This document shows positions 40,324 to 62,930 of a stretch of 64,000 nucleotides of DNA, piece by piece. The stretch covers positions 153,143-217,142 of IMG/VR virus record IMGVR_UViG_3300042895_001344; one strand, written 5' to 3'. Each line of letters opens with the position of its first letter. Position 1 is the first letter of the stretch. The notes under the pieces were generated by a model that saw only the letters and a list, made by a program, of their open reading frames with translations, searched no databases and was not told the DNA's origin. The position numbers and the translations under genes are program-made.

Positions 40324-40354
40324 TTTGTTTTTAGTTCGATTTATGTTATGTTTG
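40324..40354 (+). promoter_or_regulatory. Bacteroidota-type promoter TTTG-N19-TATGTTTG
   Basis: Exact consensus upstream of the ATG at 40379. Confidence 0.7.
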
Positions 40355-40378
40355 TACTGTAAACTAAACTTATTATTT

Positions 40379-43943: not shown

Positions 43944-44185
43944 TGAGTCAATTTATTTCTTCTTTTATTGAATCCATAAATCCAAAACCAAAGATGAAAT
44001 TTCACGCTAACTTACATAGAAACCAATGGTCAATATATCCATTACCTTTTGTTTATTTTTATTTTGAAACATGTCAACCAGATTCTCATGTATCAATTTG
44101 GAAAAACAAAATATGTGGAGTATATTTGTCCTTTAATTGGTTGAAACATACTTACAACATCGGAATCCACAAAACAATAAACTAA
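43943..44185 (+). CDS. Hypothetical protein
   Basis: 80-aa ORF coupled on both sides. Confidence 0.6.
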   Translation: MSQFISSFIESINPKPKMKFHANLHRNQWSIYPLPFVYFYFETCQPDSHVSIWKNKICGVYLSFNWLKHTYNIGIHKTIN

Positions 44186-45255
44186 TGTTAGAGATTTTAG
44201 AGAAATATTATACTGATGGTTTGTTACATAAACAAACACATCCTACTAAAGATTTGACTATATGGAATTATTCTCCTAAAGTTCAATACGAAAGATTGTG
44301 GGATGATATTACTTTGCAATGCCGTGGATTGGTGACCAATTCAAAAGGTGATATTGTTGCAAGACCATTTAAGAAATTCTTTAACTACGAAGAACATAAA
44401 CCAGAAGATATTCCAAATGAAACTTATGTTGTTTATGAAAAGATGGATGGATCATTAGGTATTCTTTTTAATTATGAAGGAGAATGGATATTATCCACTC
44501 GTGGTTCTTTTACATCACCGCAAGCAATTAAAGGAAAAGAAATTCTTGATAGACACGACATCAGTGCGTGGAGAAAAGACAACACATATTTGTTTGAAAT
44601 TATTTATCCTGAAAATAGAATTGTTGTTGATTACAAAGGTGAAGAAAAATTAGTTGTTCTTGGTGCTTTTCATACTGAAAGTGGAATGGAAATACCTGAT
44701 AGTAGTTTATTTTGGACACAAGATTCAGGATTTGAAGTTGCTATGACATACAAAACTTGGGGAGAAGGATATGATTTACTTAAAGAAGAAATATCTAAAG
44801 ATAGAGAAGGATATGTAATTAAATTTAAGAATGGTTTTCGTATGAAAATCAAAGGAGAAGAATATAAAAGATTACATAAAATATTAACCAACTTTTCATC
44901 CAAAGATATTTGGGAATTATTGAGGGATGGAAAACCTATGGATGAATTTTTAGATAGGGTACCTGATGAATTTTACAAGTGGGTTAAACAACAAGTGAGT
45001 TCTTTTGAATATGCCAAATACAGAATTGGTGAACATTGTGGTAAGATACACGATTATTTTAGATATGGAAAATATGGTGATGTGGACCCAATGCCAACAA
45101 AAAAAGATTTTGCGTTACATTTAGAAAAATGTAATGTTGAGACATTTTATAGACCAATATTATTTGCAATGTGGGACGGAAAACCATATGAACATATTAT
45201 TTGGAGAATAATGAAACCTAAATACGAAAAACCATTTAAGAAAGATGAAAATTAA
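44185..45255 (+). CDS. T4 Rnl1-type RNA ligase
   Basis: CRGLV, KKFFN, EKMDGSLG (motif I), FEII, EGYVI, MKIK; likely start is the ATG at 44185. Confidence 0.92.
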   Translation: MLEILEKYYTDGLLHKQTHPTKDLTIWNYSPKVQYERLWDDITLQCRGLVTNSKGDIVARPFKKFFNYEEHKPEDIPNETYVVYEKMDGSLGILFNYEGEWILSTRGSFTSPQAIKGKEILDRHDISAWRKDNTYLFEIIYPENRIVVDYKGEEKLVVLGAFHTESGMEIPDSSLFWTQDSGFEVAMTYKTWGEGYDLLKEEISKDREGYVIKFKNGFRMKIKGEEYKRLHKILTNFSSKDIWELLRDGKPMDEFLDRVPDEFYKWVKQQVSSFEYAKYRIGEHCGKIHDYFRYGKYGDVDPMPTKKDFALHLEKCNVETFYRPILFAMWDGKPYEHIIWRIMKPKYEKPFKKDEN

Positions 45256-45733
45256 TAATAGATTGAGATTATACCTTGACGATATAAGAACTCCTGTGGA
45301 TGATGATTGGATTGTTGTGAGAAATTATGATGAATTTGTTGCACAAATAAAATTACATGGATTAGGTAATTTTGAAGTTATATCCTTAGATCATGATTTA
45401 GGTGAAGGTGCTATGGTGGAATACTATACAAATGTAAAAAATAATTATATGTTGGATTACAACAACATAGAAGAAAGAACGGGAATGGATTGTTGTAGAT
45501 ATTTGGTTAGTGAGAGTATGAACGAAAAAATACCCTTACCTCAAGTATATATACATTCCGCAAACCCTATTGGTTCCGCAAATATGATGGGATATATCAA
45601 CAATTATTTAATGAATTGTAGACTACCTCAAACCTGTGTAAGAGTTCAAATTAATCACACCATTAATGAAATCCACATGTTATCCCCTGAAGCACGTAAA
45701 GCAAAGTGGGATCGTAGTATGGAGAATGAATAA
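45245..45733 (+). CDS. Cyclic-phosphate-processing receiver-like domain protein
   Basis: LYLDDIR, SLDHDLG, TGMD, IHSANPIG. Confidence 0.8.
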   Translation: MKINNRLRLYLDDIRTPVDDDWIVVRNYDEFVAQIKLHGLGNFEVISLDHDLGEGAMVEYYTNVKNNYMLDYNNIEERTGMDCCRYLVSESMNEKIPLPQVYIHSANPIGSANMMGYINNYLMNCRLPQTCVRVQINHTINEIHMLSPEARKAKWDRSMENE

Positions 45734-46139: not shown

Positions 46140-46197
46140 AATATAATTAATATATTAGTAAAGTATCAGGAGAGAGGTACATTTATTTTTTGTCAAG

Positions 46198-46228
46198 TCC
46201 TCGAGGTTTATACTTCGGGGATTTTTTT
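46198..46228 (+). terminator. Intrinsic terminator at the convergence with the envelope module
   Basis: TCCTCGAGG-TTATA-CTTCGGGGA plus T-run. Confidence 0.75.
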
Positions 46229-47835
46229 TATAATACCATTCTACTACCTATTTGGAAATTACTTAAAAAATCAGAAAATGGTTTGGTGTTTCCACTCATT
46301 TTGTAGTTTGCGGAGAACCCAAATCTCTTACTAATTTTATAATCAAATGCTGCACCTAATAAAAATCCCATATGTCTATTGACTGTTGTTACACCCGTTG
46401 CACTATTATAACTTATAGGTGCAAACATTGTAAATACCTGTGGTGATATTGTTAATTTTTTATTATACTGATAAGGTTTAGTCCAAAACACAATTGCAGA
46501 TGTAGCCATATTGTATTCAAACCCACCCGTCTCATCGTTTTTAAGTAATAGATTAATTACACCCACATTATAACCATATGTTCCTTTTTTTGCAGTTGGT
46601 TTGATGTATGTATATCCTAATAAATTCATATAGTTTCCACCTAAGTACGCAATTCCAGTTCCGTATGAATGTATTGCGTCTAATTGTCCATCTTCGGTCA
46701 TTCCCATTTTTGTTATACCACCCGTCATTACGATTGAACTTAAATTACTATTCACCATCAATCCAGCACTATAACTCACATCACCTGCTAACGATGATTT
46801 ACTAAGTCCTAATGATATAGACGCTAAGAAACTACCCGGAGTTGCTTCCATAACACTTATATCCGATGCCAATAGTGTTGGATTTGTTACCTCTTGTTTT
46901 TTCTTTTTTTCTTCTTCTTTTTTCTTTTCTTCCTCTTTCTTTTTCTCTTCCTCTTTTTTAGCTTCTTCTTTCTTCTCTTCTTCTTTTTTGGCTTCTTCCT
47001 TTTTCTCCTCAGTCTTTTTTTCTTCTGATTTCTTTTCTTCGGTTTTTGCTTCTTCTTTCTTTTCTTCTGTTTTAGCTTCAGTTTTCTTTTCTTCGGTTTT
47101 TTGTTCTGCAGGTTTGTCCGATTTAGTTTCAGCAGGTTTTGCCTCCGCGGGTTTTGCTTCAGCAGGTTTTGCTTCTGTTGATGATGAACTACCACCACTT
47201 GCAGGAGGTGGAGATGAACTACCACTTGCGGGTGGTGGTGCAGCTGCCGGTGGAGGTGCTGCCGTTGGTGGGGGTGCAGTGACTACGGGTGGTGGGGGTG
47301 GTGGTGCAATGTTTATTGGTGGTGGTGTTGCTGCATTTGCCGCTGCAGAACTTGCTGCCGCACTTGCCGATGAACTTGCTGCCGATGATGCCGATGAACT
47401 TGCAGCCTTTGCCGCAGCCTCTGCAGCCGCCTTTGCTGCAGCATCTGCGGCAGCTTTTGCGGCGGCGTCCGATGCCGCTTTTGCTGCGGCATCTGCAGCT
47501 GCCTTTGCGGCTGCGTCAGCGGCAGCTCTTGCTGCAGCATCTGCGGCAGCTCTCGCGGCAGCTTCTTGTGCCAATCTTATATTATCATTTATAGGACAAG
47601 GAGTTGAAAATATTGAATTTACCCATACTTGAAACGCACCACTACTCATGTCAGCTAATGTAACTATTTTAGATTTACCTCTAATAACTGCAACCGTTTG
47701 ATTTTGACCAAAGGGAATTGTTACCACATAGACTTTATTGTCACATGGATCAATATATGTTTGTGTTATAGTACTTTGACTAAACGACTTAACATAAAAA
47801 AATAATATTAGGAGAGAGATAATATATTTTTTCAT
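46228..47835 (-). CDS. Exported protein with a long Ala/Pro/Lys/Glu linker and C-terminal outer-membrane beta-barrel
   Basis: Signal peptide ...VKSFS|Q; AAADAAAK, poly-Pro and EEKK tracts; amphipathic strands; ISPQVF motif. Confidence 0.7.
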   Translation of the reverse strand: MKKYIISLLILFFYVKSFSQSTITQTYIDPCDNKVYVVTIPFGQNQTVAVIRGKSKIVTLADMSSGAFQVWVNSIFSTPCPINDNIRLAQEAAARAAADAAARAAADAAAKAAADAAAKAASDAAAKAAADAAAKAAAEAAAKAASSSASSAASSSASAAASSAAANAATPPPINIAPPPPPPVVTAPPPTAAPPPAAAPPPASGSSSPPPASGGSSSSTEAKPAEAKPAEAKPAETKSDKPAEQKTEEKKTEAKTEEKKEEAKTEEKKSEEKKTEEKKEEAKKEEEKKEEAKKEEEKKKEEEKKKEEEKKKKQEVTNPTLLASDISVMEATPGSFLASISLGLSKSSLAGDVSYSAGLMVNSNLSSIVMTGGITKMGMTEDGQLDAIHSYGTGIAYLGGNYMNLLGYTYIKPTAKKGTYGYNVGVINLLLKNDETGGFEYNMATSAIVFWTKPYQYNKKLTISPQVFTMFAPISYNSATGVTTVNRHMGFLLGAAFDYKISKRFGFSANYKMSGNTKPFSDFLSNFQIGSRMVL

Positions 47836-47841
47836 TATTCG

Positions 47842-48570
47842 TTATTCAAATTTTTCATTATAATCTTTTATTGTAAATGGACAATATACTGAATATCTAA
47901 TGTCTTTTGATAAGTTTTTAGTTACCTCATGTACGTAATTGTATTTTTGATGTTCAATCAACACACATTTATTAAAATTTGGTAAAACTTCTATTTCACC
48001 ATTTTTAGTATAAAGTTTTAATAATGACCCATCATCAAATTTTCTATCGTTGTTTATAAAAAATACAGCAGTAAATAATCTTTCACCATTTGGGTCACTA
48101 TCAAAATGTTTCTTAATAAATGATCCTTCTGGATATACATTTATATGACCAACTAATGAATCTTTAAAATTTGGTTTAATTTTTTTATTAAATAATTCAA
48201 ATAATATGTTTTCGTAACATTTAGATATTAGATCATAAATTCCATTAGTTTTTAACAAACTACTATTATGTGTTAATAAAAAATTAAAATAATCATTTTC
48301 ATTAAATCCATATTGATCATTTAATTTATTTAAAAAACAATAATCTGTATAATTCAATGAATATGAATCTACTATTTTATTGTATCTTATTGGATCTATT
48401 TCTTTAACTTTATTTTCCACATCATTTGACCATTGTAAAAACCCTAACGAGCTATTAATCTCATCAACATTTACGTCAAAATTAATTAATGATGTATTAA
48501 GTTTAACAAACTCATCTTTAGTAAGATAATTTTCTAAATCAAATATTTTATAGTCAAAATCTAAATTCAT
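47842..48570 (-). CDS. 2OG-Fe(II) oxygenase (prolyl-hydroxylase-like)
   Basis: HFD, GSLL, VHEV, RYS. Confidence 0.8.
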   Translation of the reverse strand: MNLDFDYKIFDLENYLTKDEFVKLNTSLINFDVNVDEINSSLGFLQWSNDVENKVKEIDPIRYNKIVDSYSLNYTDYCFLNKLNDQYGFNENDYFNFLLTHNSSLLKTNGIYDLISKCYENILFELFNKKIKPNFKDSLVGHINVYPEGSFIKKHFDSDPNGERLFTAVFFINNDRKFDDGSLLKLYTKNGEIEVLPNFNKCVLIEHQKYNYVHEVTKNLSKDIRYSVYCPFTIKDYNEKFE

Positions 48571-49415
48571 TATTTGTTATTTAAACCTATTGATATTTGT
48601 GTGTATCCTCTTATTGGGTCGGTATCTAATTTTAATGTAACGAATTTAAAATCTTTTATAATACCAACTTTAAATGTGGTAAATGATGAATTTGATTTTG
48701 GAAATGAAATACCACCTAAGTCATCTTTACCTTGCCATCTAATAACTTCATTACCAAATCCTACCATACCATGTATTCCTATTTTACCAATTCTTTTACC
48801 ACCACCAACATAGAAAGTTGATTCTTTTTTCCAATCTTCTTTACTAAGTGGAAAGTCGACATTGTTAATTTGACCATATGGATAATAGCTATTTTGGTCT
48901 ATTGCGTAAGTCATTACATAATCCATAATAAAATATCCTCTCTTGTCACCAATCGTTCCCCAATAAGAAATTTGTTTATTATTTGTATGTCCAAATCCAA
49001 AGGAGGTATAAACACGTTCTTTTCTAATAGTATCTCTTTTTCCACCTTCATATATATGAATTACACTTCTTTGTCTCCATCCGTAATCATCATACCAAAT
49101 ATAAGGCATTGGTTGATACCATCCCCAGTTTCCCCAATAGTAACCAAATTGATTATTTCTATTCCAATTTTGAACACGTACTCTACCACGTTGGTCTGGT
49201 TGTGATTGTTGAGGTTGATTATTTCTCCAACTACTTACATTATTTTGTTGTGGTACAGATGGTTGAACTCTTGTTTGAGTTGATTGTGATGTTTGTGATG
49301 ATGCTGGAACACTTCCACCAGTTTGTCTCCAAGAACTAACTTGGGAATATAACATTATTGTGCAGAATAATATTAATATTAATATTAAACCTGTAACTAA
49401 TAAAACCTTTTTCAT
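48570..49415 (-). CDS. Exported protein, probable small outer-membrane beta-barrel
   Basis: Signal peptide ...MLYS|Q; Gln-rich and aromatic low-complexity region; alternating Gly/aromatic strands. Confidence 0.55.
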   Translation of the reverse strand: MKKVLLVTGLILILILFCTIMLYSQVSSWRQTGGSVPASSQTSQSTQTRVQPSVPQQNNVSSWRNNQPQQSQPDQRGRVRVQNWNRNNQFGYYWGNWGWYQPMPYIWYDDYGWRQRSVIHIYEGGKRDTIRKERVYTSFGFGHTNNKQISYWGTIGDKRGYFIMDYVMTYAIDQNSYYPYGQINNVDFPLSKEDWKKESTFYVGGGKRIGKIGIHGMVGFGNEVIRWQGKDDLGGISFPKSNSSFTTFKVGIIKDFKFVTLKLDTDPIRGYTQISIGLNNK

Positions 49416-49591
49416 ACTGTTTCAGTTAAAATTGTGGTTAGTAAATAACCGGTTATTATTGGGAATGGTGAAAATATTAAAAAAAAGAACAATAACCTCC
49501 AAACCAATGGATCAACATTTGTACGGTGACTTAAACCACTACATACACCAAAAAAAACTTTGTCGTCGTGAACTCTTTTAAACTTTTTCAT
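49412..49591 (-). CDS. pspC: PspC-domain membrane protein (59 aa, absent from the ORF track)
   Basis: Hand translation MKKFKRVHDDKVFFGVCSGLSHRTNVDPLVWRLLFFFLIFSPFPIITGYLLTTILTETV; TGA overlaps the next ATG; TATTTATA 4 nt upstream. Confidence 0.85.
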   Translation of the reverse strand: MKKFKRVHDDKVFFGVCSGLSHRTNVDPLVWRLLFFFLIFSPFPIITGYLLTTILTETV

Positions 49592-49595
49592 ATAA

Positions 49596-49603
49596 TATAA
49601 ATA
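49596..49603 (-). promoter_or_regulatory. TATTTATA putative late-promoter motif
   Basis: Just after a terminator and before pspC. Confidence 0.55.
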
Positions 49604-49607
49604 TTAA

Positions 49608-49631
49608 AAAAGGGGTTATAAAACCCCTTTT
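49608..49631 (-). terminator. Intrinsic terminator
   Basis: AAAAGGGGTT-4 nt-AACCCCTTTT. Confidence 0.75.
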
Positions 49632-49849
49632 AAACATATTCTATCTAATTCTTCTTGCCTTAAACCTATGGTTGAATCTATTTGTCCTCCGTCGGATAAA
49701 ATGTTTACTAAATAAAGACCAAATTTTTTATCACTTATCTCAATTTCTTGCCCATGTATAAACCCCATATCCATCAATTTTAATCTCATACATGGTGTAC
49801 AATTTTCACAAGGATTATTTTGTGGAACGTCCACTACTTCATATTTCAT
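49616..49849 (-). CDS. feoA: FeoA-like SH3 protein with an N-terminal CxxCxxC
   Basis: RLKLMDMGFIHGQEIEI...IGLRQEE. Confidence 0.7.
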   Translation of the reverse strand: MKYEVVDVPQNNPCENCTPCMRLKLMDMGFIHGQEIEISDKKFGLYLVNILSDGGQIDSTIGLRQEELDRICLKGVL

Positions 49850-50577
49850 TATTTCGTGAATATACCTTTTTTAATCATTCTATCAAGGATGTTAGCACAT
49901 GCAATGTCTAAAGCTTTCTTTGTTGCAATACTAATTGTTGATTGATTGAACTTAATTGGGTCAATGGTCGCATCCGATAAAAGGGTTAACTCTCTTTTTG
50001 TTGTTGCCTCACCTAAACCTGACCCACCAAATACTACACCTGTTTCAGCATCAGTAAATCTAACCTGAAGACCTATACGAGTTACCATATTGTCTTTAAT
50101 ACCGTCTTTTAGGTTAATAGTTTCGTCTTCTGACACCGAGTAGTCATAACACTCAATCGTAACAAAATACTTCGCCAAATTGATTTTACCACGACCGTCT
50201 AATTTATTCTCAGAAATACCCGCAGCAGACGCTTGGAATTGTTTTACCATCCTATTCTTAATTTCTGTCTTATCCTCGGTAAATTTGAATCTATTTAAGT
50301 TTTCAAGGTATTCCATTGAAATGTTAGCAACACCCAAACCAACACGTTTTTCTTTTAACTCAGGATACATTTCATACATCTCATCAGAAATGCCTGCCTT
50401 TAATATTTGAATTGGAATTTGAGGACCGTCGTAATCCATGTAAGCACTTATGTCTCGTTTTTTTTCAAAATCTGCTTTATACTGTTCGGTTTTTGTTGAT
50501 CCTATTGTTTGTCCCATTGCATTATCTGCAATTAAACAGGTTAAAATAAAAATTAAAAATATTATTAAATGTCTCAT
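49849..50577 (-). CDS. CsgG/HfaB-like exported protein
   Basis: Signal peptide ...NAMG|Q; GVANISMEYL.N.NRFKFTE; IGLQVRFTDAETGVV.G.G.G; C-terminal A.KKAL helix. Confidence 0.65.
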   Translation of the reverse strand: MRHLIIFLIFILTCLIADNAMGQTIGSTKTEQYKADFEKKRDISAYMDYDGPQIPIQILKAGISDEMYEMYPELKEKRVGLGVANISMEYLENLNRFKFTEDKTEIKNRMVKQFQASAAGISENKLDGRGKINLAKYFVTIECYDYSVSEDETINLKDGIKDNMVTRIGLQVRFTDAETGVVFGGSGLGEATTKRELTLLSDATIDPIKFNQSTISIATKKALDIACANILDRMIKKGIFTK

Positions 50578-50586
50578 AGTTTTATA

Positions 50587-51330
50587 TTAAGGGTTCCATT
50601 TATTTAATGCACTTATGTAGTTACTCGTCATATGATCTTTGGCAGTATTACCTGTGAATACAGCTTTAAGATATTCACCAACTCTTTGCCAATCAATCAT
50701 CCATTTTTTAACTTTACCCTCACTATCAATACGTAATTCAGTATTAACGTGGTGATATCCAATATTTGGGGCACGAGTAACAACATCTAAATTATTAACA
50801 ATCCTTAATGATTCAATTGATGATTTATCAAAGTTCTGTTTGAATACTTTATTACCAACTCTTGGACTACCGATAGTACAACATATAATTTTATTTGATT
50901 TATAAATTGAATAAATCTCATATGCACATAAGGTAGAAACTGCAGCTCCCAAACTGTGACCGCAAACAATAATATTATCAACTTCACCCTCCCCACCTAA
51001 TGTGGATAATGCTTTTTCAAATGATTTATAAGTTTCGTCTTTAACAGCGTCCCAAGATGATTTAAATCCAATGTGAACTTTTTCACCATCTTGAACAAAT
51101 GGAACTTTATCAATTGATGCGTCGTTTTGGAAATCCTTTTTAGAAGAACTTCCTCTCCAAACGATATAGATAGATTTATCCTTTGTGGCAACAAATCCTT
51201 GTGTATCTGTTTTTTTATCGTCAATCCATTTAATTAATTTTAATCTTTGTGCTTTAAAATCAATGTCTTTTTGTTCTGAATATACTTTCTCGGTTAAACC
51301 GACATTGTATAGTATTTCGTTTTTTGTCAT
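50587..51330 (-). CDS. Class-3 lipase (alpha/beta hydrolase)
   Basis: VWRGS, VHIGF, GHSLG, TIGSPRVG, VNNLDVVTRAP, Y.HV, DH. Confidence 0.92.
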   Translation of the reverse strand: MTKNEILYNVGLTEKVYSEQKDIDFKAQRLKLIKWIDDKKTDTQGFVATKDKSIYIVWRGSSSKKDFQNDASIDKVPFVQDGEKVHIGFKSSWDAVKDETYKSFEKALSTLGGEGEVDNIIVCGHSLGAAVSTLCAYEIYSIYKSNKIICCTIGSPRVGNKVFKQNFDKSSIESLRIVNNLDVVTRAPNIGYHHVNTELRIDSEGKVKKWMIDWQRVGEYLKAVFTGNTAKDHMTSNYISALNKWNP

Positions 51331-51354
51331 TGTGTATTTGTTTTTGTTATAATA

Positions 51355-51591
51355 TTACTGTCTTGCTGGCCATATACCACGAGTGGCTATTATGTATTTC
51401 ATACCATCCATAGGTGGTTCCATTTTAGGTACCGCAAATAAATTTGGTGTTGCTCCGTATCTATCTTGCAGTAATACATATAACGCCTCATTTTCCCTTA
51501 TGTTTAATAATTGTCCGTTGCATTCTACATATCCTTGAGGAGCGTAGCCTCCTGCAAATAATTTAATTGCCCCAATTAATTCTTCTTCCAT
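51355..51591 (-). CDS. Stand-alone phage tail-collar domain protein
   Basis: IGAIKLFAGGYAPQGYVECNGQLL...ALYVLL...YG; YIIATRGIWP. Confidence 0.85.
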   Translation of the reverse strand: MEEELIGAIKLFAGGYAPQGYVECNGQLLNIRENEALYVLLQDRYGATPNLFAVPKMEPPMDGMKYIIATRGIWPARQ

Positions 51592-51594
51592 AGT

Positions 51595-52668
51595 TTATTG
51601 TGTTTTTGTTTTAGATTGATCACCCTTCTTTAAAAATATATCAAATATTGTTTTAGGACTGTATTCTACAAGTAATATTAAACCCTTCCTCAACGTAGAG
51701 TTTTTTACAACGTGATTTAAAATATCTTTAATAACCTCTTTAATGGCGAAATTTTTAGTGTCAAAATATGTTCCATCAAAATATCTTGGACTTGTTCCCT
51801 CACCACCTGGTGAACCGTGATGAGCACCTATAGAGGTACGCCAATAATCAGCATGATTTTGCCATTCAGGAACTGAAACCAATTCAGGTGAATCAAAAAA
51901 TAAATTCCACGATAATACATTACCCTTTTGTAACATATTACCAGTACCTAAGTTAAAAAGATTTAAAAAGTATTGATTAAACTTATCTAATTTGTGATCA
52001 CTTGTTGTTACCATTCCTCCTATTTCTACATTGATATGTCCTGTACTATATGCTTCTTCCTTTATTGCAAATTCAGGATTTTTAAATCTTGGTGATAAAC
52101 CCTTTCCGAGTTGAAATATAGGTTCTTTAGGATTTCCTGGTAGATGTGTTAAAACACGAATAGCATTTTCTTTGTTGATAGGATACTTACGAGAACTGTA
52201 TTTTAATAATGGCCAAATTGCTCTTAATAGACCACCTTGATTTTCACCTGGTGTTAACCAAATTTTTCCCTCAACCATCATATCCGCAGCAATTTCCTTT
52301 GTGTCTTCATTAACCCATCCTCTTTGTCCCGTAACTGTTACTTCCACATTGATACAAATCTCATCTCCAATCCACATCCCTTGTTGAGGACAGATTATGG
52401 AATAAATTCTACCTTCATTGGTATATCCTATTCTTGAAATATAAGGAGCAAATTGTACATAACAACGTTTTGGGTCTTTTTCCCCATTTAGGGTATTCCA
52501 ACTAAACATTGGCCATTTAACACCCCATTGTCTTTGTAGTAAATTAATGTTATCCATATTACCCAACATAGGTAATGAGGTTAAATCTGTGGTAGGATAT
52601 AGCATTTTCTTTTGTTTTTCAGATGGAAAACCACCTTGCCATCCCGTAGGAATTTGTTCGTTTGTCAT
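51595..52668 (-). CDS. Hypothetical protein
   Basis: 357-aa ORF; TATTTATA at 52679-52686 upstream. Confidence 0.7.
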   Translation of the reverse strand: MTNEQIPTGWQGGFPSEKQKKMLYPTTDLTSLPMLGNMDNINLLQRQWGVKWPMFSWNTLNGEKDPKRCYVQFAPYISRIGYTNEGRIYSIICPQQGMWIGDEICINVEVTVTGQRGWVNEDTKEIAADMMVEGKIWLTPGENQGGLLRAIWPLLKYSSRKYPINKENAIRVLTHLPGNPKEPIFQLGKGLSPRFKNPEFAIKEEAYSTGHINVEIGGMVTTSDHKLDKFNQYFLNLFNLGTGNMLQKGNVLSWNLFFDSPELVSVPEWQNHADYWRTSIGAHHGSPGGEGTSPRYFDGTYFDTKNFAIKEVIKDILNHVVKNSTLRKGLILLVEYSPKTIFDIFLKKGDQSKTKTQ

Positions 52669-52691
52669 ATTCTTTTAATATAAATACACAA

Positions 52692-52716
52692 AAAAGGGAG
52701 TTTTTAACTCCCTTTT
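52692..52716 (-). terminator. Intrinsic terminator
   Basis: AAAAGGGAGTT-TTT-AACTCCCTTTT. Confidence 0.8.
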
Positions 52717-52719
52717 ATA

Positions 52720-52968
52720 CTAACCTTCTGTTTCTTCTTTCTTTTTGTGAGAGAATTTATCCAAAGTATCTGCACCCATTCCAATTCCCGTGATTAACAT
52801 CACCGCATTCACCAATTCAGGTGATGGAGCGAAATCCGCGTGAGAGAACGAATTTAAAATCATCGTAATACATAGGAATAAAGCACCTATCATTGCTATT
52901 ACCGGCTTTACCGATATTGATCCTCTTTCATCTTTGAAAATTTCAATAACCCATTGTTTAAAATTCAT
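52720..52968 (-). CDS. Two-TM small membrane protein (holin-like)
   Basis: Two hydrophobic helices, charged C-terminal tail. Confidence 0.55.
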   Translation of the reverse strand: MNFKQWVIEIFKDERGSISVKPVIAMIGALFLCITMILNSFSHADFAPSPELVNAVMLITGIGMGADTLDKFSHKKKEETEG

Positions 52969-52997
52969 AGTTTTTTATTTTTTGTCTTTTGTTTATT

Positions 52998-53666
52998 TTA
53001 TCCTTCCGTATGCATTTCTGCATTTTCATCTTTAATTTTACCACATTTTAAACACTCCTCAATGCCATCACCATCCAAGTCACCCCAAACGTGTTCACAT
53101 TGTCTATGTGCGAAATACATATCTATTTTACCGTCACCATCAAAATCAATACCATCTATTGTACCATCACCATCTTCATCAACCTCAACACCTGTTCTTG
53201 GTTGTGATTTGAAAGGACTTTCAACAACTTGAGGATTATTTGGTTCTGATTTTACCTCTACTTTGTTTGCCTCAATTAAGTTGATTTCATGTGCGTTCTT
53301 TGCGGCTTGCACAAATGCATCTGGAATCAATGGAGTGTTATTTGGTGGAGTTACAGGCATATCAGCAGTATTACTCATTGACGTACCATCTTCTTCGTCC
53401 ATTTTCTGAACTAACATCTTATCCTTATCAGTATCACTAAACCAATAGTCAATGATTTTACCATAACTACCGATAAACGCTCCTAATAATAATAAAAGAA
53501 GTTCTTTCCATTCTCCTTCAATCGTAGATTTATTTAATATACCAAAGAACATTCCTCCAATAATAATCATAAATCCACCTAACACTATCGCAGTGATATA
53601 CCACCTGCGTTTCATCATATTTGCTAATAAATCCTTAAATCCGCTTGGCGGTTGTTCATTACTCAT
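52998..53666 (-). CDS. Two-TM membrane protein with DxDGDG Ca-binding-like repeats and a CxHxW...CxxC tail
   Basis: DEDGDGTIDGIDFDGDGKID; CEHVWGDLDGDGIEECLKCG. Confidence 0.65.
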   Translation of the reverse strand: MSNEQPPSGFKDLLANMMKRRWYITAIVLGGFMIIIGGMFFGILNKSTIEGEWKELLLLLLGAFIGSYGKIIDYWFSDTDKDKMLVQKMDEEDGTSMSNTADMPVTPPNNTPLIPDAFVQAAKNAHEINLIEANKVEVKSEPNNPQVVESPFKSQPRTGVEVDEDGDGTIDGIDFDGDGKIDMYFAHRQCEHVWGDLDGDGIEECLKCGKIKDENAEMHTEG

Positions 53667-53683
53667 CTTTTTTTAATTTAAAA

Positions 53684-53998
53684 TTACCATTTAGGTGCTT
53701 CTTCTTTAAACTCATCACCTTCTTTTTTCTTAGGTTTTGGTGCTGGCGCCGGTTTAGCACTACCGTCTCCACCTTTATTGATGATTACAGTTTTACCACC
53801 ACCCGATTGTTGAGTTTGTGAATTGGTAATGTTGATTACAGGTGCCGCTTGTTGAACGGGAGCCTCTTTTTCGTCACCACCTGTTAATTTTGTTGTAAAC
53901 CAACCACCCACACCTAATGTGATGGTGCTTACTAAACCGATAATGATGTTCTTAATTGAACCACCTGTACTTTCTGATTTTTCTTGTTCTTCTGCCAT
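53684..53998 (-). CDS. Single-TM protein with a Pro/Gly/Lys-rich tail
   Basis: IIIGLVSTITLGVGGWF followed by low-complexity sequence. Confidence 0.65.
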   Translation of the reverse strand: MAEEQEKSESTGGSIKNIIIGLVSTITLGVGGWFTTKLTGGDEKEAPVQQAAPVINITNSQTQQSGGGKTVIINKGGDGSAKPAPAPKPKKKEGDEFKEEAPKW

Positions 53999-54030
53999 AA
54001 TTTTGTGTTTTTTGTCTTTATATAATTATC

Positions 54031-54399
54031 TTAAATTTTATTAAAATCTGTAATTCCTAACATATTACCCGCAACATCGTATAATGCAATCCTATACGCT
54101 GAAGATGGTAAAGCGGATGTATACACCCTTAAAATGTTATCACCAACCTTAACCTCACTTGTTGATTTTGATACCACTCTATTGGAAATATCAAAAATCT
54201 TAACGGTTACAGTTTGAGCAACATCACTTTTTATGTTCATTGCAACTTCATTTGTTATAAATGAAGTTTCTAATTTTAATCCCACTGAACTTGAGATTTT
54301 AAGGTTGTCACTAATCACTTGTGGTTGCATTGGTATGTCTACTTTTCTACATCCAACAAGTAAGATTAATCCAAAGAGTACGAGAGATACTTTTTTCAT
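54031..54399 (-). CDS. Lipoprotein consisting of a T9SS-CTD-like Ig domain
   Basis: LVGC lipobox; VTVKIFDISNRVV...G.N.L.V.TSALPSSAYRIAL. Confidence 0.6.
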   Translation of the reverse strand: MKKVSLVLFGLILLVGCRKVDIPMQPQVISDNLKISSSVGLKLETSFITNEVAMNIKSDVAQTVTVKIFDISNRVVSKSTSEVKVGDNILRVYTSALPSSAYRIALYDVAGNMLGITDFNKI

Positions 54400-54411
54400 T
54401 TTTTGTCTTGT

Positions 54412-54765
54412 TTAATTTATAATTATTCTTGTTTTACCTATTTGATTATTATTTTGATCCTTTAACACGACACTTAGGTTTTTTGTCGGTAAAGTATTAG
54501 TAAATATTTTAAGAGAGTTTAATCCTACTTTACCAGTAAACCTTTCCCTTGATACTACTTGGTTTTGAACCGTATCAATCATTGTTAAAGTATATACTCC
54601 TCCTGTAGTTAAATTAATATTAATAACATCCCCGTTTTTTACCTTATTTTCAGATAAGGAGAAAAATTCCACATTTGTCGGTGACACAGGTGTAAACGGA
54701 ACCATTTTTTTGCACGATATTATAAAAACCATACAACACAATAATATAATTTTGATACGTTTCAT
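54412..54765 (-). CDS. Lipoprotein paralog with a T9SS-CTD-like domain
   Basis: IISC lipobox; YTLTMID...VV...G.NSLKIFTNTLP. Confidence 0.55.
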   Translation of the reverse strand: MKRIKIILLCCMVFIISCKKMVPFTPVSPTNVEFFSLSENKVKNGDVININLTTGGVYTLTMIDTVQNQVVSRERFTGKVGLNSLKIFTNTLPTKNLSVVLKDQNNNQIGKTRIIIN

Positions 54766-54768
54766 ATT

Positions 54769-55662
54769 TTAAAATTGAAAGTTTGTTCCTATCATAAATA
54801 GAATTGGATTACTCTTTTTATACCCAACCGATTCACTTAATTTATTCCAAGTTGTGTTATATCTAACATTAGTATTCAATACAAATTTTTTAGTTATTTT
54901 CCAATCAATAGATGTACCATAATATAAGTCCAAATTGAAATCATCTACATATGCTAAATCCGATTCAGTCCCATCTTTGAATACTTTGTAGATATCACTC
55001 ATTGCAAATATTTGTGGTGAGATGTTTACTCTCTTTGTTTTGAATGTATACGTATACATTGCCATACCTCTATAACTAATTTGACTTGATGATGGCATTT
55101 GTGGATATATTAAATCTTTAAAATCACCATTTTCATCTACTATATATTTTCCTTCCCATTGACCTTGATAACTTCCCCAAAACGATTTTGACGCAATCAC
55201 ACTATAACCAAATGTTCCAAACTTTTTAGTTCTGAATACATCAATGAATGATAGAGAAATATCTTTTTGAAAATCAAAATCGGTTGAATAGAATGATTGT
55301 AATGTAGTAGTTCTTGTATTCGTATTTCTACTGAAACCATAACCCACACCATAGTAGTTCCATATTGGATTTATTGATGATGCGAATGAGTGACCCCATT
55401 TACCATTTTTAGATGATTTACTATATCCTAAATTTAAGGTAGTAGATACTTGTTTTCCAATTACACCTACTGATAAATTTGAGGATGAAAGAACATCTTT
55501 TGAAAAATCAATATATGACTCTAATATACCTAAATTATTCCAATCACCACTTTCTCCAAATAATTCTTTTGGTGATAGTTGTAAGGTATCTGGTTTTACA
55601 ATTTGTGCGTTTGTAACAAATGTTGTCAAAATTAGTGACAGAATTAATAATAGTTTTTTCAT
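54769..55662 (-). CDS. Outer-membrane beta-barrel protein
   Basis: Signal peptide ...VTNA|Q; amphipathic strands; ISPQIF; C-terminal Phe (GTNFQF). Confidence 0.75.
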   Translation of the reverse strand: MKKLLLILSLILTTFVTNAQIVKPDTLQLSPKELFGESGDWNNLGILESYIDFSKDVLSSSNLSVGVIGKQVSTTLNLGYSKSSKNGKWGHSFASSINPIWNYYGVGYGFSRNTNTRTTTLQSFYSTDFDFQKDISLSFIDVFRTKKFGTFGYSVIASKSFWGSYQGQWEGKYIVDENGDFKDLIYPQMPSSSQISYRGMAMYTYTFKTKRVNISPQIFAMSDIYKVFKDGTESDLAYVDDFNLDLYYGTSIDWKITKKFVLNTNVRYNTTWNKLSESVGYKKSNPILFMIGTNFQF

Positions 55663-58271
55663 TAATTTATTTTTATTTTTAATGATTTTCCATCTTTATT
55701 AACTGCGTCCGTTGAACCTATTGAAATTAAACCCAATATGTTATCCAATTTTGTGTTTGACGAAAATGAAATCTTATATGTTGTTGTCTTATCTAAACTT
55801 GTACTACCATCACTTACCAAAGAACCTAAATTAATGTAATTACCCTTGTTGGTTGCATAGTTGGTAGGTGAACCTTTTGTGGTAAATTGTATTCCTTTAA
55901 AATTTAAGACCGAATTATCGTAGTTTAATTGAAATTGAGTTCCTACCACGTTTTGTTGTAATGGGTCAAATGTGATGTAAGCATAAACACTATCACCAAT
56001 TACTTCGGTCATAATAGATGCGTTGATGTCAGTTGATATTGGTGTACTCATTGATGTTCTAACTGTCATCGTTGTGATATTATTTGATGGAGGAGTTGCC
56101 GAATGTGATAAGTTTACATCACCTTTCCAACTAACAGCCAAATCGTAGTTATAACTTATTACATTATCTAATAAACTAAAATTATAAGTTTTTCCTGCAA
56201 AATTTTGAAAAGAACTCCAAGTTGACTTACCAATTTTATTATAAATTGAATCAGGTATCAAACGTATTGTATTATCCAAAGTATAATTACTAACTAAGTT
56301 TTGTACACCCGTTAAATTTTGTAATAATTTGAAACAATCCGCTTCATTAAATAAACCATCATCATTTACATCTGCGTTTTTATATTGAATTCCGTAAGTA
56401 AACTCATTACCACTTTGATTTCCAAATATACCACCATTTGCCAATTCCTTAAATGCCAAATACACATCTGATACTGTTACGATACTATTATACAAAGTTT
56501 TTAATTGTGTACTATCATATTCTTGTAATTCCATTTTGTGTTGTTTGAACGCACCTTGTTGGGTAAGTCCAATACCACATGCAAATGCATAGTCGGTATT
56601 TGAACCATTCATATTTCTAATATATTGATTATATGCAGAAGTTCCATCGGTTACTTTTGTTAATGGAGATGGAACAGTATATTGTGCCCAACCATTATTG
56701 TCATGTGATGTATATGTAACAGGCCCATCATACGCATCTAATATTTTTACATTTGATATTTTCGTTGGGTCTATACTTCCAACTTGTCTCATATCAATTA
56801 ACAATCTACTATTACCATTTAACCAACTTGCATTTGGATTTGTATAAGACCACTCTACCCCACCCGGAGATATAGTTGCTTTGTATGATGCAGGTGCCGA
56901 TACGAATTGGTAACTTAATCCCCATCCACCATAACCCGATGTTGATACTCCATTACGAGTTGAACCAACATATTCACTTAACCCCTGTACTACTTTAATA
57001 TAAACTTCTTTTGTTTGTCCGTCTGATATTACACCAGCATGTACCGCTGCGGCTGGAATATATGAATCACTTGTATAGATATCGGTTCCCCATATTGCTC
57101 CACCTGTTGTACCTGTTATTGTTATTCTATATATCTTACCAATATCCGATTCATTAAATTGTTGCATATCGGATGTTCCTGCTGTTAATGGAATACCAGT
57201 TGTATAAATCTTTGAAGTATCTATTTGATTTGAAAGAAATACTTTACCCAAACCACTCAATGATTTATAACCATCCGCCGCTGCCCAATTTGAATATGTG
57301 TCGTTTCTTTTGAATATCTGTGCTAAGAATTTTGTTTTATCTATTGAAGTATTAAACTTAAATCCAAATAATGCTTTTATAGTTTCTCCGTTTGAATGTG
57401 TTACTGAATTGGTATAGAACTCCGTAAATGTTGCATCATCGGGATTAGACCAAGTTCCATATTCAATTACATATGGGTTACTCCAATTGTTTGATAAGTC
57501 ATTCCATTGATTACCATTCCATTTTGTTACTGCATAATCCTCACTATGATTATATCCGTTTGGTTCACCATTTGCCCAATTATTATACACACCTGGTCGG
57601 TTTCCGGCAGTTGGTCCGTTGGATGTTTTCATCACAGTCCCCTTTTCAGGACCCGCATCAATTACCCAAGTTCCATCTATAACTTCATCTGTTGCTGCAA
57701 ACCATATATTTGATTGTGGTACATTAGCTTGAATAAATAAATCTTCCGATGATGATGTTAGTGTTAATAGATAACCCGTCTGTCCTTTGAATGTTGTTGT
57801 TAACGCAATTGCTCTTGCGTTTGTATAAGTTGTACCGGTTGTTACGGGTTTGTAAAAGTGACCATTTACTCCATTGAAATAATATCCTGGTTGATTAACA
57901 GTTGCGGCCACTGAAATATTAATATCACCAATTACTGTTCCTGTGTTTATTTTTAGAGACGCTAACGCAGTATTAATACTTGCCATTGTTCCAGTTACCA
58001 CTAAACGAGTTTTATTACCACTTAAAGTAAATCCACTTGCTGCCGTTAAACCCGTTGTTGTGTTTAATACGAATGTTGTACCTGATGGTGGATTGACTAA
58101 ACTTATAGAAGCAAGTAAAGTAGATGTTGCACCAAATCCACTTAATGAAAATCCACTAGCGTCTTGTCCTGTGGTATTCACAGTAAATGATTTAGGGTCT
58201 GGAGCCGTTACTGACTGACCAAACCCTAAAAATGATATAAATAAAAATAATACTACTAATAGTTTCTTCAT
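55662..58271 (-). CDS. Exported adhesin-like protein: C-type lectin + LCCL + dockerin-like + cohesin-like domains
   Basis: Signal peptide ...LGFG|Q; GYLLTLTS.SE, WANGEPN, WNDL; IWGTDIYTSDS.I.AAAVHAG; ADVNDDG; GTQFQLNYD. Confidence 0.8.
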   Translation of the reverse strand: MKKLLVVLFLFISFLGFGQSVTAPDPKSFTVNTTGQDASGFSLSGFGATSTLLASISLVNPPSGTTFVLNTTTGLTAASGFTLSGNKTRLVVTGTMASINTALASLKINTGTVIGDINISVAATVNQPGYYFNGVNGHFYKPVTTGTTYTNARAIALTTTFKGQTGYLLTLTSSSEDLFIQANVPQSNIWFAATDEVIDGTWVIDAGPEKGTVMKTSNGPTAGNRPGVYNNWANGEPNGYNHSEDYAVTKWNGNQWNDLSNNWSNPYVIEYGTWSNPDDATFTEFYTNSVTHSNGETIKALFGFKFNTSIDKTKFLAQIFKRNDTYSNWAAADGYKSLSGLGKVFLSNQIDTSKIYTTGIPLTAGTSDMQQFNESDIGKIYRITITGTTGGAIWGTDIYTSDSYIPAAAVHAGVISDGQTKEVYIKVVQGLSEYVGSTRNGVSTSGYGGWGLSYQFVSAPASYKATISPGGVEWSYTNPNASWLNGNSRLLIDMRQVGSIDPTKISNVKILDAYDGPVTYTSHDNNGWAQYTVPSPLTKVTDGTSAYNQYIRNMNGSNTDYAFACGIGLTQQGAFKQHKMELQEYDSTQLKTLYNSIVTVSDVYLAFKELANGGIFGNQSGNEFTYGIQYKNADVNDDGLFNEADCFKLLQNLTGVQNLVSNYTLDNTIRLIPDSIYNKIGKSTWSSFQNFAGKTYNFSLLDNVISYNYDLAVSWKGDVNLSHSATPPSNNITTMTVRTSMSTPISTDINASIMTEVIGDSVYAYITFDPLQQNVVGTQFQLNYDNSVLNFKGIQFTTKGSPTNYATNKGNYINLGSLVSDGSTSLDKTTTYKISFSSNTKLDNILGLISIGSTDAVNKDGKSLKIKIN

Positions 58272-58274
58272 AAA

Positions 58275-59927: not shown

Positions 59928-59929
59928 AG

Positions 59930-61693: not shown

Positions 61694-61766
61694 GCCTCGT
61701 TAGCTCAGTTGGTAGAGCAAGTCATTTGTAATGATTAGGTCTGCGGTTCAAGTCCGTAACGAGGCT
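61694..61766 (+). tRNA. trnT: tRNA-Thr(TGT)
   Basis: GCCTCGT/ACGAGGC acceptor, AGTCA-TTTGTAA-TGATT anticodon arm, GGTTCAA T-loop. Confidence 0.93.
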
Positions 61767-62892: not shown

Positions 62893-62930
62893 CATTTTGT
62901 TTATTGGAATATTTTTTGTATATTATCATC

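What the first reader, a model, noticed from the sequence alone, without database searches (positions are those of the whole stretch)
49412..49591. Unannotated phage PspC gene heading the last envelope unit
Seen: a 59-aa ORF below the ORF-track cutoff with the PspC signature KxxRxxDDKVxxGVCxGL...VDPxxxRLLF plus a TM helix. Established: PspC is the membrane sensor of the phage-shock response, triggered by mislocalised outer-membrane pores. Inference: the phage buffers or jams the envelope stress caused by its own pore and barrel proteins.
Basis: partly seen in the sequence, partly recalled or inferred. Interest (0 to 1): 0.65.

Follow-up and report, generated by a model that had tools for sequence, protein, structure and literature searches.

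The report
Minimal PspC gene in jumbo phage
A giant freshwater phage that most likely infects Bacteroidota carries a real, selected 59-residue gene that is only the membrane core of the bacterial envelope-stress sensor PspC. It is an optional add-on placed just ahead of the phage's own outer-membrane barrel gene, its function is untested, and it cannot signal the way classical E. coli PspC does.

Summary
Window 49412-49591 (minus strand) encodes a 59-aa protein matching Pfam PspC (54.6 bits, cut-off 25), under purifying selection (dN/dS about 0.14). About 47 close homologues lie on contigs up to 351 kb.

The window is the end of a lake-water T4-like jumbo phage. The host is probably Bacteroidota.

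The protein is only the PspC core: a basic N-terminus, a short amphipathic helix, an invariant Arg and one TM helix. It fails both true-PspC equivalog models and lacks the C-terminal PspA-binding half. The 217-kb phage record held (about 65% complete) shows no PspA, PspB, Toastrack or PadR.

Its stop codon overlaps the start of a secreted protein whose C-terminus folds as an 8-stranded OmpX/Ail/OmpA-like barrel. The gene sits in a 14-kb block where 13 of 18 genes are exported or membrane proteins. A conserved hairpin plus TATTTATA box precedes it.

PspC is accessory. Only 18 of 74 related barrel loci have it, with at least 7-9 gains or losses, usually together with a FeoA-like gene.

"Phage-shock sensor" is not transferable, and "buffers or jams stress" remains an untested inference.

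Moderately interesting: a new phage-borne variant of a known domain.

The parts
49412..49591 (-). Gene for a 59-aa minimal PspC-domain inner-membrane protein: basic N-terminus, short amphipathic helix, invariant R32, one TM helix at about residues 28-55, and a 4-residue tail.
   Evidence: ORF; Pfam PspC 54.6 bits; family alignment with 24 invariant residues; dN/dS 0.14; hydropathy.
49608..49631 (-). Terminator-like hairpin (A-run, GGGGTT/AACCCC stem, T-run) overlapping the stop codon of the FeoA-like gene.
   Evidence: Consensus scan. Conserved in 12 of 15 distinct PspC-bearing relatives, with pairing-preserving stem variants. Folding energy -12 to -17 kcal/mol for most (weakest -8.8, L020), z -3 to -7 against shuffles.
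49596..49603 (-). TATTTATA box 4 nt upstream of the PspC ATG. The same box precedes the terminase, portal and other genes. Whether it is a promoter or a translation-initiation signal is unresolved.
   Evidence: the box lies 0-30 nt upstream of 9 ORFs of at least 100 aa in the window, against 0.32 expected.
48570..49415 (-). Downstream gene whose ATG overlaps the PspC stop by 4 nt (ATGA). It encodes a 281-aa secreted protein: Sec signal peptide with Gln at +1, a disordered Q/S/W-rich linker with repeated VSxWR, and a C-terminal 8-stranded outer-membrane beta-barrel.
   Evidence: Alignment; AlphaFold2 pLDDT about 90 over residues 136-281; Foldseek top hits Ail, OmpX and OmpA-TM, E 4e-6 to 1e-5, probability 1.0; 852 homologues, none with a function-bearing name or Pfam domain among the 120 listed.
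49616..49849 (-). FeoA-like (SH3-like) 77-aa cytoplasmic protein with an N-terminal CxxCxxC motif. It is usually gained and lost together with PspC.
   Evidence: Pfam FeoA 25 bits against cut-off 23; architectures and independent-pair test.
49849..50577 (-). 242-aa secreted protein (signal peptide with Gln at +1), a conserved backbone gene. It resembles CsgG/HfaB/LpoB clusters by language-model features only.
   Evidence: Atlas feature scores 0.93-0.94; no Pfam hit; the fold was unusable at pLDDT 39.
47842..48570 (-). 2OG-Fe(II) oxygenase gene, a strain-specific insertion between the two barrel genes.
   Evidence: Pfam; absent from L002, L003 and L025-27; an RNA-library contig joins 47817 to 48566.
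46228..47835 (-). 535-aa secreted protein: signal peptide with Gln at +1, a long A/P/K/E-rich low-complexity linker, and a C-terminal outer-membrane beta-barrel at about residues 335-535. It is the last gene of the unit.
   Evidence: Atlas structure matches to DUF2490 and YaiO outer-membrane barrels, TM 0.67-0.74; ORF.
46195..46224 (.). Terminator-like hairpin between the convergent genes that end at 46139 (+) and 46228 (-); probable end of the unit.
   Evidence: Consensus scan.

Best explanation
SHOWN. The ORF is a genuine, selected gene of a lake-water T4-like jumbo phage; relatives are 335-351 kb. The host is most likely Bacteroidota.

The product is a 59-residue inner-membrane protein made of nothing but the PspC core domain. 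It is not an orthologue of proteobacterial PspC and lacks that protein's PspA-binding C-terminal half.

The gene is accessory. Usually together with the FeoA-like gene, it forms an optional insert between a hairpin/TATTTATA cassette and a conserved phage gene for an OmpX/OmpA-like outer-membrane barrel. It is therefore positioned to be made together with a block of exported envelope proteins that share an upstream box with the terminase and portal genes.

INFERRED (my committed mechanism). The protein inserts N-in into the host inner membrane late in infection. There it acts through its membrane-embedded core, independently of PspA, as a membrane-protecting accessory. The analogy is the PspA-independent role of Yersinia PspBC against mislocalised outer-membrane pore proteins. 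This would help keep the inner membrane tight and energised while the phage loads the Sec pathway with its own outer-membrane proteins.

The benefit must be conditional, depending on host or strain, because most relatives do without the gene.
For: Identity:
- Pfam PspC 54.6 bits against 25.
- Invariant F14, G15, C17, G19, R32 and a near-invariant TM helix. This fits the described PspC core, a cryptic helix, a conserved Arg and a TM helix (PMC11237479).
- dN/dS 0.14.

Phage and host:
- Gp23, Gp20 and T4-type terminase; IMG/VR record; lake-water runs.
- Relatives of the ClpB-like protein are mostly Bacteroidota.
- 6 of 6 Sec signal peptides have Gln at +1, matching the Bacteroidetes Q-rule (PMC5837995).

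Context:
- The barrel fold and the second barrel.
- 13 of 18 genes in 46228-60577 are exported or membrane proteins.
- The stop/start overlap with the barrel gene is present in every PspC-bearing locus.
- The shared hairpin plus TATTTATA cassette.
- An RNA-library contig spans the PspC/barrel junction.

Precedent: PspBC are sufficient to counteract mislocalised secretin toxicity and bind the secretins in the inner membrane (PMC5596341). PspC is reported to act independently of PspA in some species (PMC11237479).
Against: - There is no functional test.
- The barrel gene occurs without PspC in 56 of 74 related loci, and PspC was gained or lost at least 7-9 times. The barrel therefore does not need PspC.
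- The Yersinia precedent needs PspB as well and concerns multimeric secretins, not small monomeric barrels.
- Overlaps of 1-4 nt between neighbouring genes are common throughout this genome, so the ATGA overlap is weak evidence of a functional link.
- The near-invariant TM helix suggests a specific protein partner rather than a general membrane effect.
- The RNA evidence comes from contigs only.
Confidence: 0.35

Rival explanations
1. Output-less decoy. The core-only PspC pairs within the membrane with host PspC-domain sensors, which in Bacteroidota are mostly 450-870-aa multidomain proteins. Because it has no output domain, it silences or mis-sets the host's envelope-stress response during infection ('jams' rather than 'buffers'). 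The FeoA-like protein could be its cytoplasmic adaptor.
For: - The protein retains exactly the core and nothing else.
- Host-phylum genomes carry PspC domains in long multidomain frames as well as mini forms.
- Yersinia PspB and PspC form homo- and heterodimers (reference list of PMC5596341).
- The near-invariant TM helix fits a specific protein partner.
- The patchy accessory distribution fits a host-specific function.
- Popp et al. predict that Bacteroidota PspC is tied to a beta-lactam stress response (PMC9239133).
Against: - The best identity to any sampled Bacteroidota PspC domain is only 45%.
- There is no precedent for PspC decoys.
- No interaction data exist.
- The host is unidentified.
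Confidence: 0.22
2. Lysis-timing component. The small membrane protein acts like a holin, antiholin or another lysis regulator, possibly with the barrel and neighbouring small membrane proteins.
For: - It is small, has a single TM helix and shares a box with late-type genes.
- In two other phage lineages, mini-PspC genes lie in a conserved neighbourhood with a DUF2061 membrane protein and an M23 peptidase.
- An 82-aa membrane protein, a class-3 lipase and other membrane proteins lie just upstream in the window.
Against: - It has no charged C-terminal tail and essentially no periplasmic part.
- No M23 or T4-lysozyme family gene was found in the 217-kb record, which is about 65% complete.
- No PHROG holin or lysis family matches.
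- Being optional in three quarters of relatives is odd for a core lysis part.
- It does not fit spanin definitions: no periplasmic domain on PspC and no lipobox on the barrel.
Confidence: 0.12
3. Superinfection exclusion or receptor masking. An inner-membrane protein and a phage outer-membrane barrel together block entry of competing phages.
For: - Phage-encoded outer-membrane barrels of the Ail/OmpX fold class and small inner-membrane exclusion proteins are known (own knowledge: lambda Lom, T4 Imm and Sp).
- The accessory, frequently exchanged distribution is typical of such genes.
Against: - The gene shares its upstream box with terminase and portal genes, which suggests late rather than early expression.
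- No sequence similarity to known exclusion proteins.
- The barrel is present without PspC in most relatives.
Confidence: 0.08

Closest known systems
Stand-alone PspC-domain mini-proteins of bacteria (for example Bacillus subtilis YvlC, and the 60-76-aa forms in Bacteroidota seen here in L139 and L146)
   Same: Same domain and size class. Pfam PspC covers the whole protein: a basic N-terminus, a G-x-C-x-G motif, a conserved Arg and one TM helix. The stand-alone domain of about 50 aa is described in PMC9239133.
   Different: - It is encoded by a phage.
- Its best identity to 251 sampled Bacteroidota genomes is only 45%.
- Its neighbours are a FeoA-like protein and an outer-membrane barrel. Cellular forms sit next to Toastrack/DUF4097, PadR/HAAS or other membrane proteins (PMC11237479, PMC9239133).
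Canonical PspC of the proteobacterial Psp regulon (E. coli, Yersinia enterocolitica)
   Same: It shares the N-terminal core, aligning to positions 2-59 of the 121-position TIGR02978 model. It is made in a setting where outer-membrane proteins are overproduced, which is the classical inducing condition.
   Different: - It fails both equivalog cut-offs.
- It lacks the C-terminal cytoplasmic domain that binds PspA (PMC5596341).
- The phage record held has no PspA, PspB or PspF.
- PspB is over cut-off in only 2 of 251 sampled Bacteroidota genomes.
Mini-PspC genes in other large phages (IMG/VR loci L029-L042; 85-aa ORF in the 735-kb megaphage LR756501)
   Same: They are 60-85-aa PspC-domain proteins on AT-rich viral contigs, 43-57% identical to this one.
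   Different: They sit in other neighbourhoods (HAD-like protein, DUF2061 membrane protein, M23 peptidase), with no barrel and no FeoA-like gene.
Phage-encoded 8-stranded outer-membrane barrels of the Ail/OmpX/Lom class (comparison for the partner gene)
   Same: The partner's C-terminal 145 residues match Ail, OmpX and OmpA-TM folds.
   Different: - No sequence-family match.
- It has a disordered N-terminal extension of about 110 residues with VSxWR repeats.
- No cellular homologue in the 251 sampled Bacteroidota genomes.

Membership tests
PspC domain family (Pfam PF04024) | Profile match above the curated gathering score | tested here: met
   54.6 bits against 25, E 9e-15, model positions 1-55 of 58; 53.2 bits in the six-frame genome scan.
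PspC domain family (Pfam PF04024) | Core anatomy: short first (cryptic) helix, conserved arginine, then a TM helix (as described in PMC11237479) | tested here: met
   Invariant F14, G15, C17, G19 and R32, with a hydrophobic stretch at residues 28-55. Topology is inferred from charge distribution and was not measured.
Canonical PspC of the Psp regulon (NCBIfam TIGR02978 / NF007973 equivalogs) | Score above the equivalog cut-off | tested here: not met
   34.2 bits against 104, and 14 bits against 136.
Canonical PspC of the Psp regulon | C-terminal domain that binds PspA or PspB | tested here: not met
   The protein ends 4 residues after the TM helix and aligns only to positions 2-59 of 121. The role of that domain is described in PMC5596341.
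Canonical PspC of the Psp regulon | Partners PspA and PspB encoded alongside or present in the system | tested here: not met
   No PspA or PspB over cut-off in the 217-kb phage record, which is about 65% complete. In 251 sampled Bacteroidota genomes PspA is over cut-off in 97 and PspB in 2. The actual host is unknown.
Canonical PspC of the Psp regulon | Senses mislocalised secretins or membrane damage and maintains proton-motive force | not testable with these tools
   Needs expression and membrane-potential assays.
PspC-Toastrack / PadR-HAAS modules (YvlC/LiaF type) | Adjacent or fused Toastrack (DUF4097/DUF2807) domain or PadR-type regulator | tested here: not met
   The partner folds as an 8-stranded barrel, not a beta-helix. 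No DUF4097 or PadR was found in the record. A cellular example with a Toastrack-looking neighbour is seen in L146, judged by reading the sequence only.
Phage holin / antiholin | Small TM protein with a charged C-terminal tail, next to an endolysin, matching a holin family | tested here: inconclusive
   It has one TM helix but no charged tail. No PHROG holin match. No M23 or T4-lysozyme family gene in the record. Other endolysin families were not searched.
Two-component spanin | Inner-membrane subunit with a periplasmic coiled-coil plus an outer-membrane lipoprotein subunit | tested here: not met
   PspC has a 4-residue periplasmic tail. The barrel protein has a signal-peptidase-I type signal with Gln at +1 and no lipobox.

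The most novel reading that the evidence does not exclude
FeoA-like plus mini-PspC is a mobile two-gene phage module. It acts as an output-less mimic of the host's PspC-domain envelope-stress sensors: the PspC core pairs with host sensors in the membrane, and the SH3-like FeoA protein acts on the cytoplasmic side. Infected Bacteroidota would then fail to mount their envelope-stress response while the phage rebuilds the envelope. That would be a viral counter-measure against a bacterial stress response, and a natural minimal system for learning what the PspC core does on its own.
Probability: 0.15. Interest if true: 0.7.

Novelty: new variant of a known kind. Interest (0 to 1): 0.42.

Why it matters
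The PspC domain is widespread in bacteria, but what its membrane core does on its own, outside the E. coli and Yersinia PspABC circuit, is still unclear.

Here a virus carries just that core, under selection. Natural near-isogenic variants with and without it exist, for example L161 against L156, L168 against L216, and L221 against L223. It always sits directly ahead of a phage outer-membrane barrel gene.

That offers a compact, testable system for PspA-independent PspC function. It is also an example of large freshwater phages bringing envelope-stress parts along with a whole set of exported envelope proteins.

No PHROG family matched any mini-PspC tested, and none of the papers returned by the literature search described one. 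Only automatic JGI labels exist.

Tried and rejected
1. "The partner is a Toastrack domain", the usual PspC neighbour. Rejected: it folds as an 8-stranded barrel matching Ail, OmpX and OmpA.
2. "PspC and the barrel are an obligatory pair". This was my working idea. Rejected by the barrel-centred survey: 56 of 74 barrel loci have no PspC.
3. Complex prediction of PspC with the barrel protein gave no answer. It is not evidence either way.
4. The AlphaFold2 model of the 242-aa upstream protein had pLDDT 39 and was unusable, so no fold search was run on it. "CsgG-like" stays a lead from atlas features only.
5. The genome-contig scan with the PspC alignment found no relative because the patterns were too specific. 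It was replaced by the genome search on 251 Bacteroidota genomes.
6. megablast of 12 kb of the window and tblastn of PspC against INPHARED phages gave no match.
7. PHROGs has no family for this or six other viral mini-PspCs, nor for the neighbouring block.
8. The "Acinetobacter phage MD-2021a" PspC hit is a mislabelled bacterial contig carrying aidB and an HPP-family gene. The "Listeria phage" hits are short unannotated fragments and were not relied on.
9. Pair-counting on the hairpin alignment was abandoned because MAFFT shifted the register of variant stems. Each sequence was folded on its own instead.
10. "The host lacks PspA, so Psp is irrelevant" is not tenable: 97 of 251 sampled Bacteroidota genomes have PspA, although B. 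thetaiotaomicron and the Flavobacterium used as the centre do not.
11. The large representative-protein search was not run. The family scans settled the identity, and the operators had marked that search as costly.

Full report
1. THE OBSERVATION

Window 49412..49591 holds a 59-codon ATG-initiated ORF on the minus strand. It matches Pfam PspC (PF04024) at 54.6 bits against a gathering score of 25 (E 9e-15), over model positions 1-55 of 58. A six-frame scan of the whole record finds the same single match.

The quoted motif is present: K3, R6, D9-D10-K11-V12, G15-V16-C17, G19-L20, V26-D27-P28 and R32-L33-L34-F35. One strongly hydrophobic stretch follows at residues 28-55.

The word search found 47 homologues at 64-97% identity. 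Nearly all are exactly 59 aa, and they lie on contigs up to 351 kb. In an alignment of 24 of them, 24 residues are invariant. These include F14, G15, C17, G19, R32 and most of the TM helix. Across 18 distinct coding sequences the median dN/dS is 0.14 at dS about 1. The gene is real and under purifying selection.

"Unannotated" only reflects the first stage's length cut-off. JGI already labels the homologues "phage shock protein PspC".

2. WHAT THE WINDOW IS

The window is bases 153143-217142 of a 217,142-bp IMG/VR virus record estimated 65% complete. It encodes a T4-type major capsid protein, portal and large terminase, and a ClpB-like AAA+ protein. It also holds five tRNA genes. Related contigs reach 335-351 kb.

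At least 14 lake-water metagenome runs from different studies hold the stretch.

The host was not identified. Two lines point to Bacteroidota:
- The closest cellular relatives of the ClpB-like protein are mostly Flavobacteriales, Chitinophagaceae, Saprospiraceae and similar groups, at 53-58% identity.
- All six Sec-type signal peptides I could read in the block 46228-60577 expose Gln at +1. This is the Bacteroidetes "Q-rule" (PMC5837995). The cleavage sites are my reading of the sequences, not a predictor's output.

3. ANATOMY OF THE LOCUS

On the minus strand the order is:
- a 357-aa protein (no family match);
- a tail-collar-domain mini-protein;
- a class-3 lipase;
- a 242-aa secreted protein;
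- a FeoA-like 77-aa protein;
- a hairpin plus TATTTATA box;
- PspC;
- a 281-aa protein;
- a 2OG-Fe(II) oxygenase;
- a 535-aa protein;
- a terminator-like hairpin.

The PspC stop overlaps the ATG of the 281-aa gene by 4 nt.

The 281-aa protein has a signal peptide, a disordered linker with repeated VSxWR, and a C-terminal domain modelled with pLDDT about 90 as eight long antiparallel strands. Foldseek ranks Ail, OmpX and the OmpA transmembrane domain first, at E 4e-6 to 1e-5 and probability 1.0. It is not a Toastrack domain, the usual PspC neighbour.

The 535-aa protein ends in a larger outer-membrane barrel, with TM 0.67-0.74 to DUF2490 and YaiO models.

The 242-aa protein resembles CsgG/HfaB/LpoB clusters only by language-model features, at 0.93-0.94. 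It has no Pfam hit and its fold failed. "CsgG-like" is therefore a lead, not a finding.

Thirteen of the 18 genes between 46228 and 60577 encode exported or membrane proteins. None has a PHROG family.

4. SIGNALS

The hairpin at 49631..49608 folds at -14.5 kcal/mol, z = -7 against shuffles. It recurs in 12 of 15 distinct PspC-bearing relatives, with stems that vary but keep pairing: GGGG/CCCC, GGGGG/CCCCC and GGGAG/CTCCC.

It is followed by a T-run and an invariant TATTTATA box 3-4 nt before the ATG. The same hairpin plus box precedes the terminase gene and the 357-aa gene. The box alone precedes the portal and other genes. In total it lies 0-30 nt upstream of 9 large ORFs, against 0.32 expected.

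In this window, PspC therefore does head a unit, and it shares its upstream signal with late or structural genes. Whether the box is a promoter or a translation signal is open. At 4 nt from the ATG it is too close for a T4-style -10 element with a normal leader.

In some relatives the cassette is missing and the FeoA-like gene overlaps the PspC start by 4 nt (L013-15, L025).

5. EXPRESSION

Four freshwater metatranscriptomes, held as Logan contigs, contain pieces of the region. All four hold the barrel gene. One contig (49223-49555) spans the PspC/barrel junction. None covers 49556-49735.

This is presence in RNA libraries. It is not proof of transcription, strand or level.

6. WHY IT IS NOT CANONICAL PspC

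- It reaches 34.2 bits against the 104-bit cut-off of TIGR02978, and 14 against 136 for NF007973. It aligns only to positions 2-59 of 121.
- It ends four residues after the TM helix. [quoted passage not shown]
- The phage record held has no PspA, PspB, DUF4097 (Toastrack) or PadR over cut-off.
- In 251 sampled Bacteroidota genomes, PspA is over cut-off in 97 and PspB in 2.
- The phage protein finds matches in 120 of those genomes, but the best is 45% identical at 36.5 bits. No recent donor is visible.
- Cellular relatives are both mini forms (60-76 aa) and long multidomain proteins.

7. THE KEY CORRECTION: PspC IS ACCESSORY

Starting from PspC, every close relative shows the PspC-barrel overlap. 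Starting from the barrel gives a different picture.
- Of 74 viral barrel loci with enough upstream sequence, only 18 have a PspC.
- In the rest, the barrel follows the hairpin/TATTTATA cassette directly or overlaps the FeoA-like gene.
- On a barrel tree of 57 distinct sequences, PspC presence (13 against 44) needs at least 9 changes. At least 7 of these are forced by well-supported branches.

Architectures among loci with at least 1000 nt upstream:

| Loci | Architecture |
|---|---|
| 20 | barrel (other upstream genes) |
| 17 | 240 - barrel |
| 11 | 240 - FeoA - PspC - barrel |
| 2 | 240 - FeoA - barrel |
| 1 | FeoA - 240 - barrel |
| 1 | FeoA - 240 - PspC - barrel |
| 1 | 240 - PspC - barrel |

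In phylogenetically independent contrasts, an adjacent FeoA-like gene changes with PspC in about 5 of 7 and never oppositely (median p 0.06).

FeoA-like plus PspC therefore behaves as an optional two-gene insert. The barrel does not need PspC.

Both PspC and the barrel gene begin with TATGAAAAAG. This direct repeat could mediate precise loss or gain, but it may be chance, because many genes here start with MKK.

Gene overlaps of 1-4 nt are common throughout this genome. The overlap alone therefore says little about function.

8. OTHER PHAGES

Fourteen further IMG/VR loci carry 60-65-aa PspC-domain genes at 43-57% identity, in other AT-rich lineages. They sit next to a HAD-like protein, a DUF2061 membrane protein and an M23 peptidase.

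The 735-kb megaphage LR756501 has an 85-aa one.

No PHROG family covers any of them. None of the papers returned by my literature search on phage-encoded PspC mentions PspC.

9. MECHANISM

Shown: this is an accessory, selected, core-only PspC-domain membrane protein, placed to be co-expressed with phage outer-membrane proteins.

Inferred and committed (0.35): it acts in the inner membrane, without PspA, as a membrane-protecting accessory during the late flood of exported phage proteins. The precedent is that PspBC alone counteract mislocalised secretins and bind them in the inner membrane (PMC5596341).

Rivals:
- an output-less decoy of host PspC-domain sensors (0.22);
- a lysis-timing part (0.12);
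- superinfection exclusion (0.08).

The patchy distribution does not separate the first two. Either could depend on the host's own Psp repertoire. The complex prediction gave no answer.

10. VERDICT

The feature is a new phage-borne variant of a known domain family, in a new genomic context. It is of moderate interest, mainly as a natural minimal system for asking what the PspC core does by itself.

Limits:
- the host is not identified;
- topology and signal-peptide cleavage are read from sequence only;
- RNA evidence comes from contigs only;
- the genome samples are samples, so "not found" means not found in those searched.

Noticed in passing
window, both strands; e.g. 34384-34391 (-), 32550-32557 (-), 52679-52686 (-), 3533-3540 (-), 22516-22523 (+), 21072-21079 (+): An exact TATTTATA box lies 4-30 nt upstream of the start codons of the terminase, portal and at least seven other large genes (9 observed against 0.32 expected). 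It is often preceded by an A-run/GC-stem/T-run hairpin. It is a candidate phage-specific late promoter or translation signal for this clade. Its reverse complement is the T4 late-promoter consensus TATAAATA (own knowledge).
   Followed up: partly
window 47842-48570 (-): A 2OG-Fe(II) oxygenase gene is inserted between the two barrel genes in this strain only. Relatives, and one RNA-library contig (joint 47817->48566), lack it.
   Followed up: partly
window 50587-51591 (-): A class-3 lipase (Pfam 95.9 bits) and a 78-aa tail-collar-domain protein sit inside the envelope block. They are present in some relatives (L026, L027) and absent in others (L002, L003). A phage lipase next to outer-membrane proteins might act on the outer membrane at lysis.
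   Followed up: no
window 49616-49849 (-): The FeoA-like (SH3-like) 77-aa protein has an N-terminal CxxCxxC motif. It co-varies with PspC, and in some relatives its stop overlaps the PspC start.
   Followed up: partly
window 52720-53998 (-): Three small membrane proteins in a row (82 aa, 222 aa and 104 aa, each with at least one hydrophobic TM-like segment), none with a significant PHROG or Pfam match. The 82-aa one has a charged C-terminal tail, is followed by a terminator-like hairpin, and looks holin-like.
   Followed up: no
window 54031-60577 (-): A run of exported proteins:
- two lipoproteins with lipoboxes, one of them DUF3244-like;
- a 297-aa and a 550-aa secreted protein;
- an 869-aa secreted protein with LCCL, C-type lectin and cohesin domains;
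- a 215-aa TM protein with a near-threshold YajG-type (Lipoprotein_16) match.

This is an unusually large set of envelope or surface proteins for a phage.
   Followed up: partly
window 40325-42412 (+), 44137-45733 (+): The phage encodes a two-ring ClpB/ClpC-like AAA+ chaperone, a T4-type RNA ligase, and next to it a 162-aa protein whose homologue in related phages carries a cREC_REC domain. All three are conserved beside the envelope block in related phages.
   Followed up: no
L029-L042 (IMG/VR loci), e.g. L032:2986-5131, L030:3001-5263: Other AT-rich phage lineages carry 60-65-aa mini-PspC genes in a conserved neighbourhood with a DUF2061 membrane protein and an M23 peptidase. This may be a lysis or cell-wall module.
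   Followed up: partly
L148 (CAKLQH020000003.1 85966-94136): The INPHARED record 'Acinetobacter phage MD-2021a' (240 kb) looks like a mislabelled bacterial contig: it carries isovaleryl-CoA dehydrogenase, an HPP-family protein and a radical-SAM DNA-repair protein around its 'PspC'.
   Followed up: partly
window 46887-47632, both strands: Long shadow ORFs (112-214 aa) overlap the A/P/K/E-rich low-complexity linker of the 535-aa gene. They are artefacts of the repetitive composition, not genes.
   Followed up: no
window 61694-62893 (+): A cluster of five tRNA genes (Thr-TGT, Asn-GTT, Met-CAT, Ser-TGA, Glu-TTC) near the end of the record.
   Followed up: no
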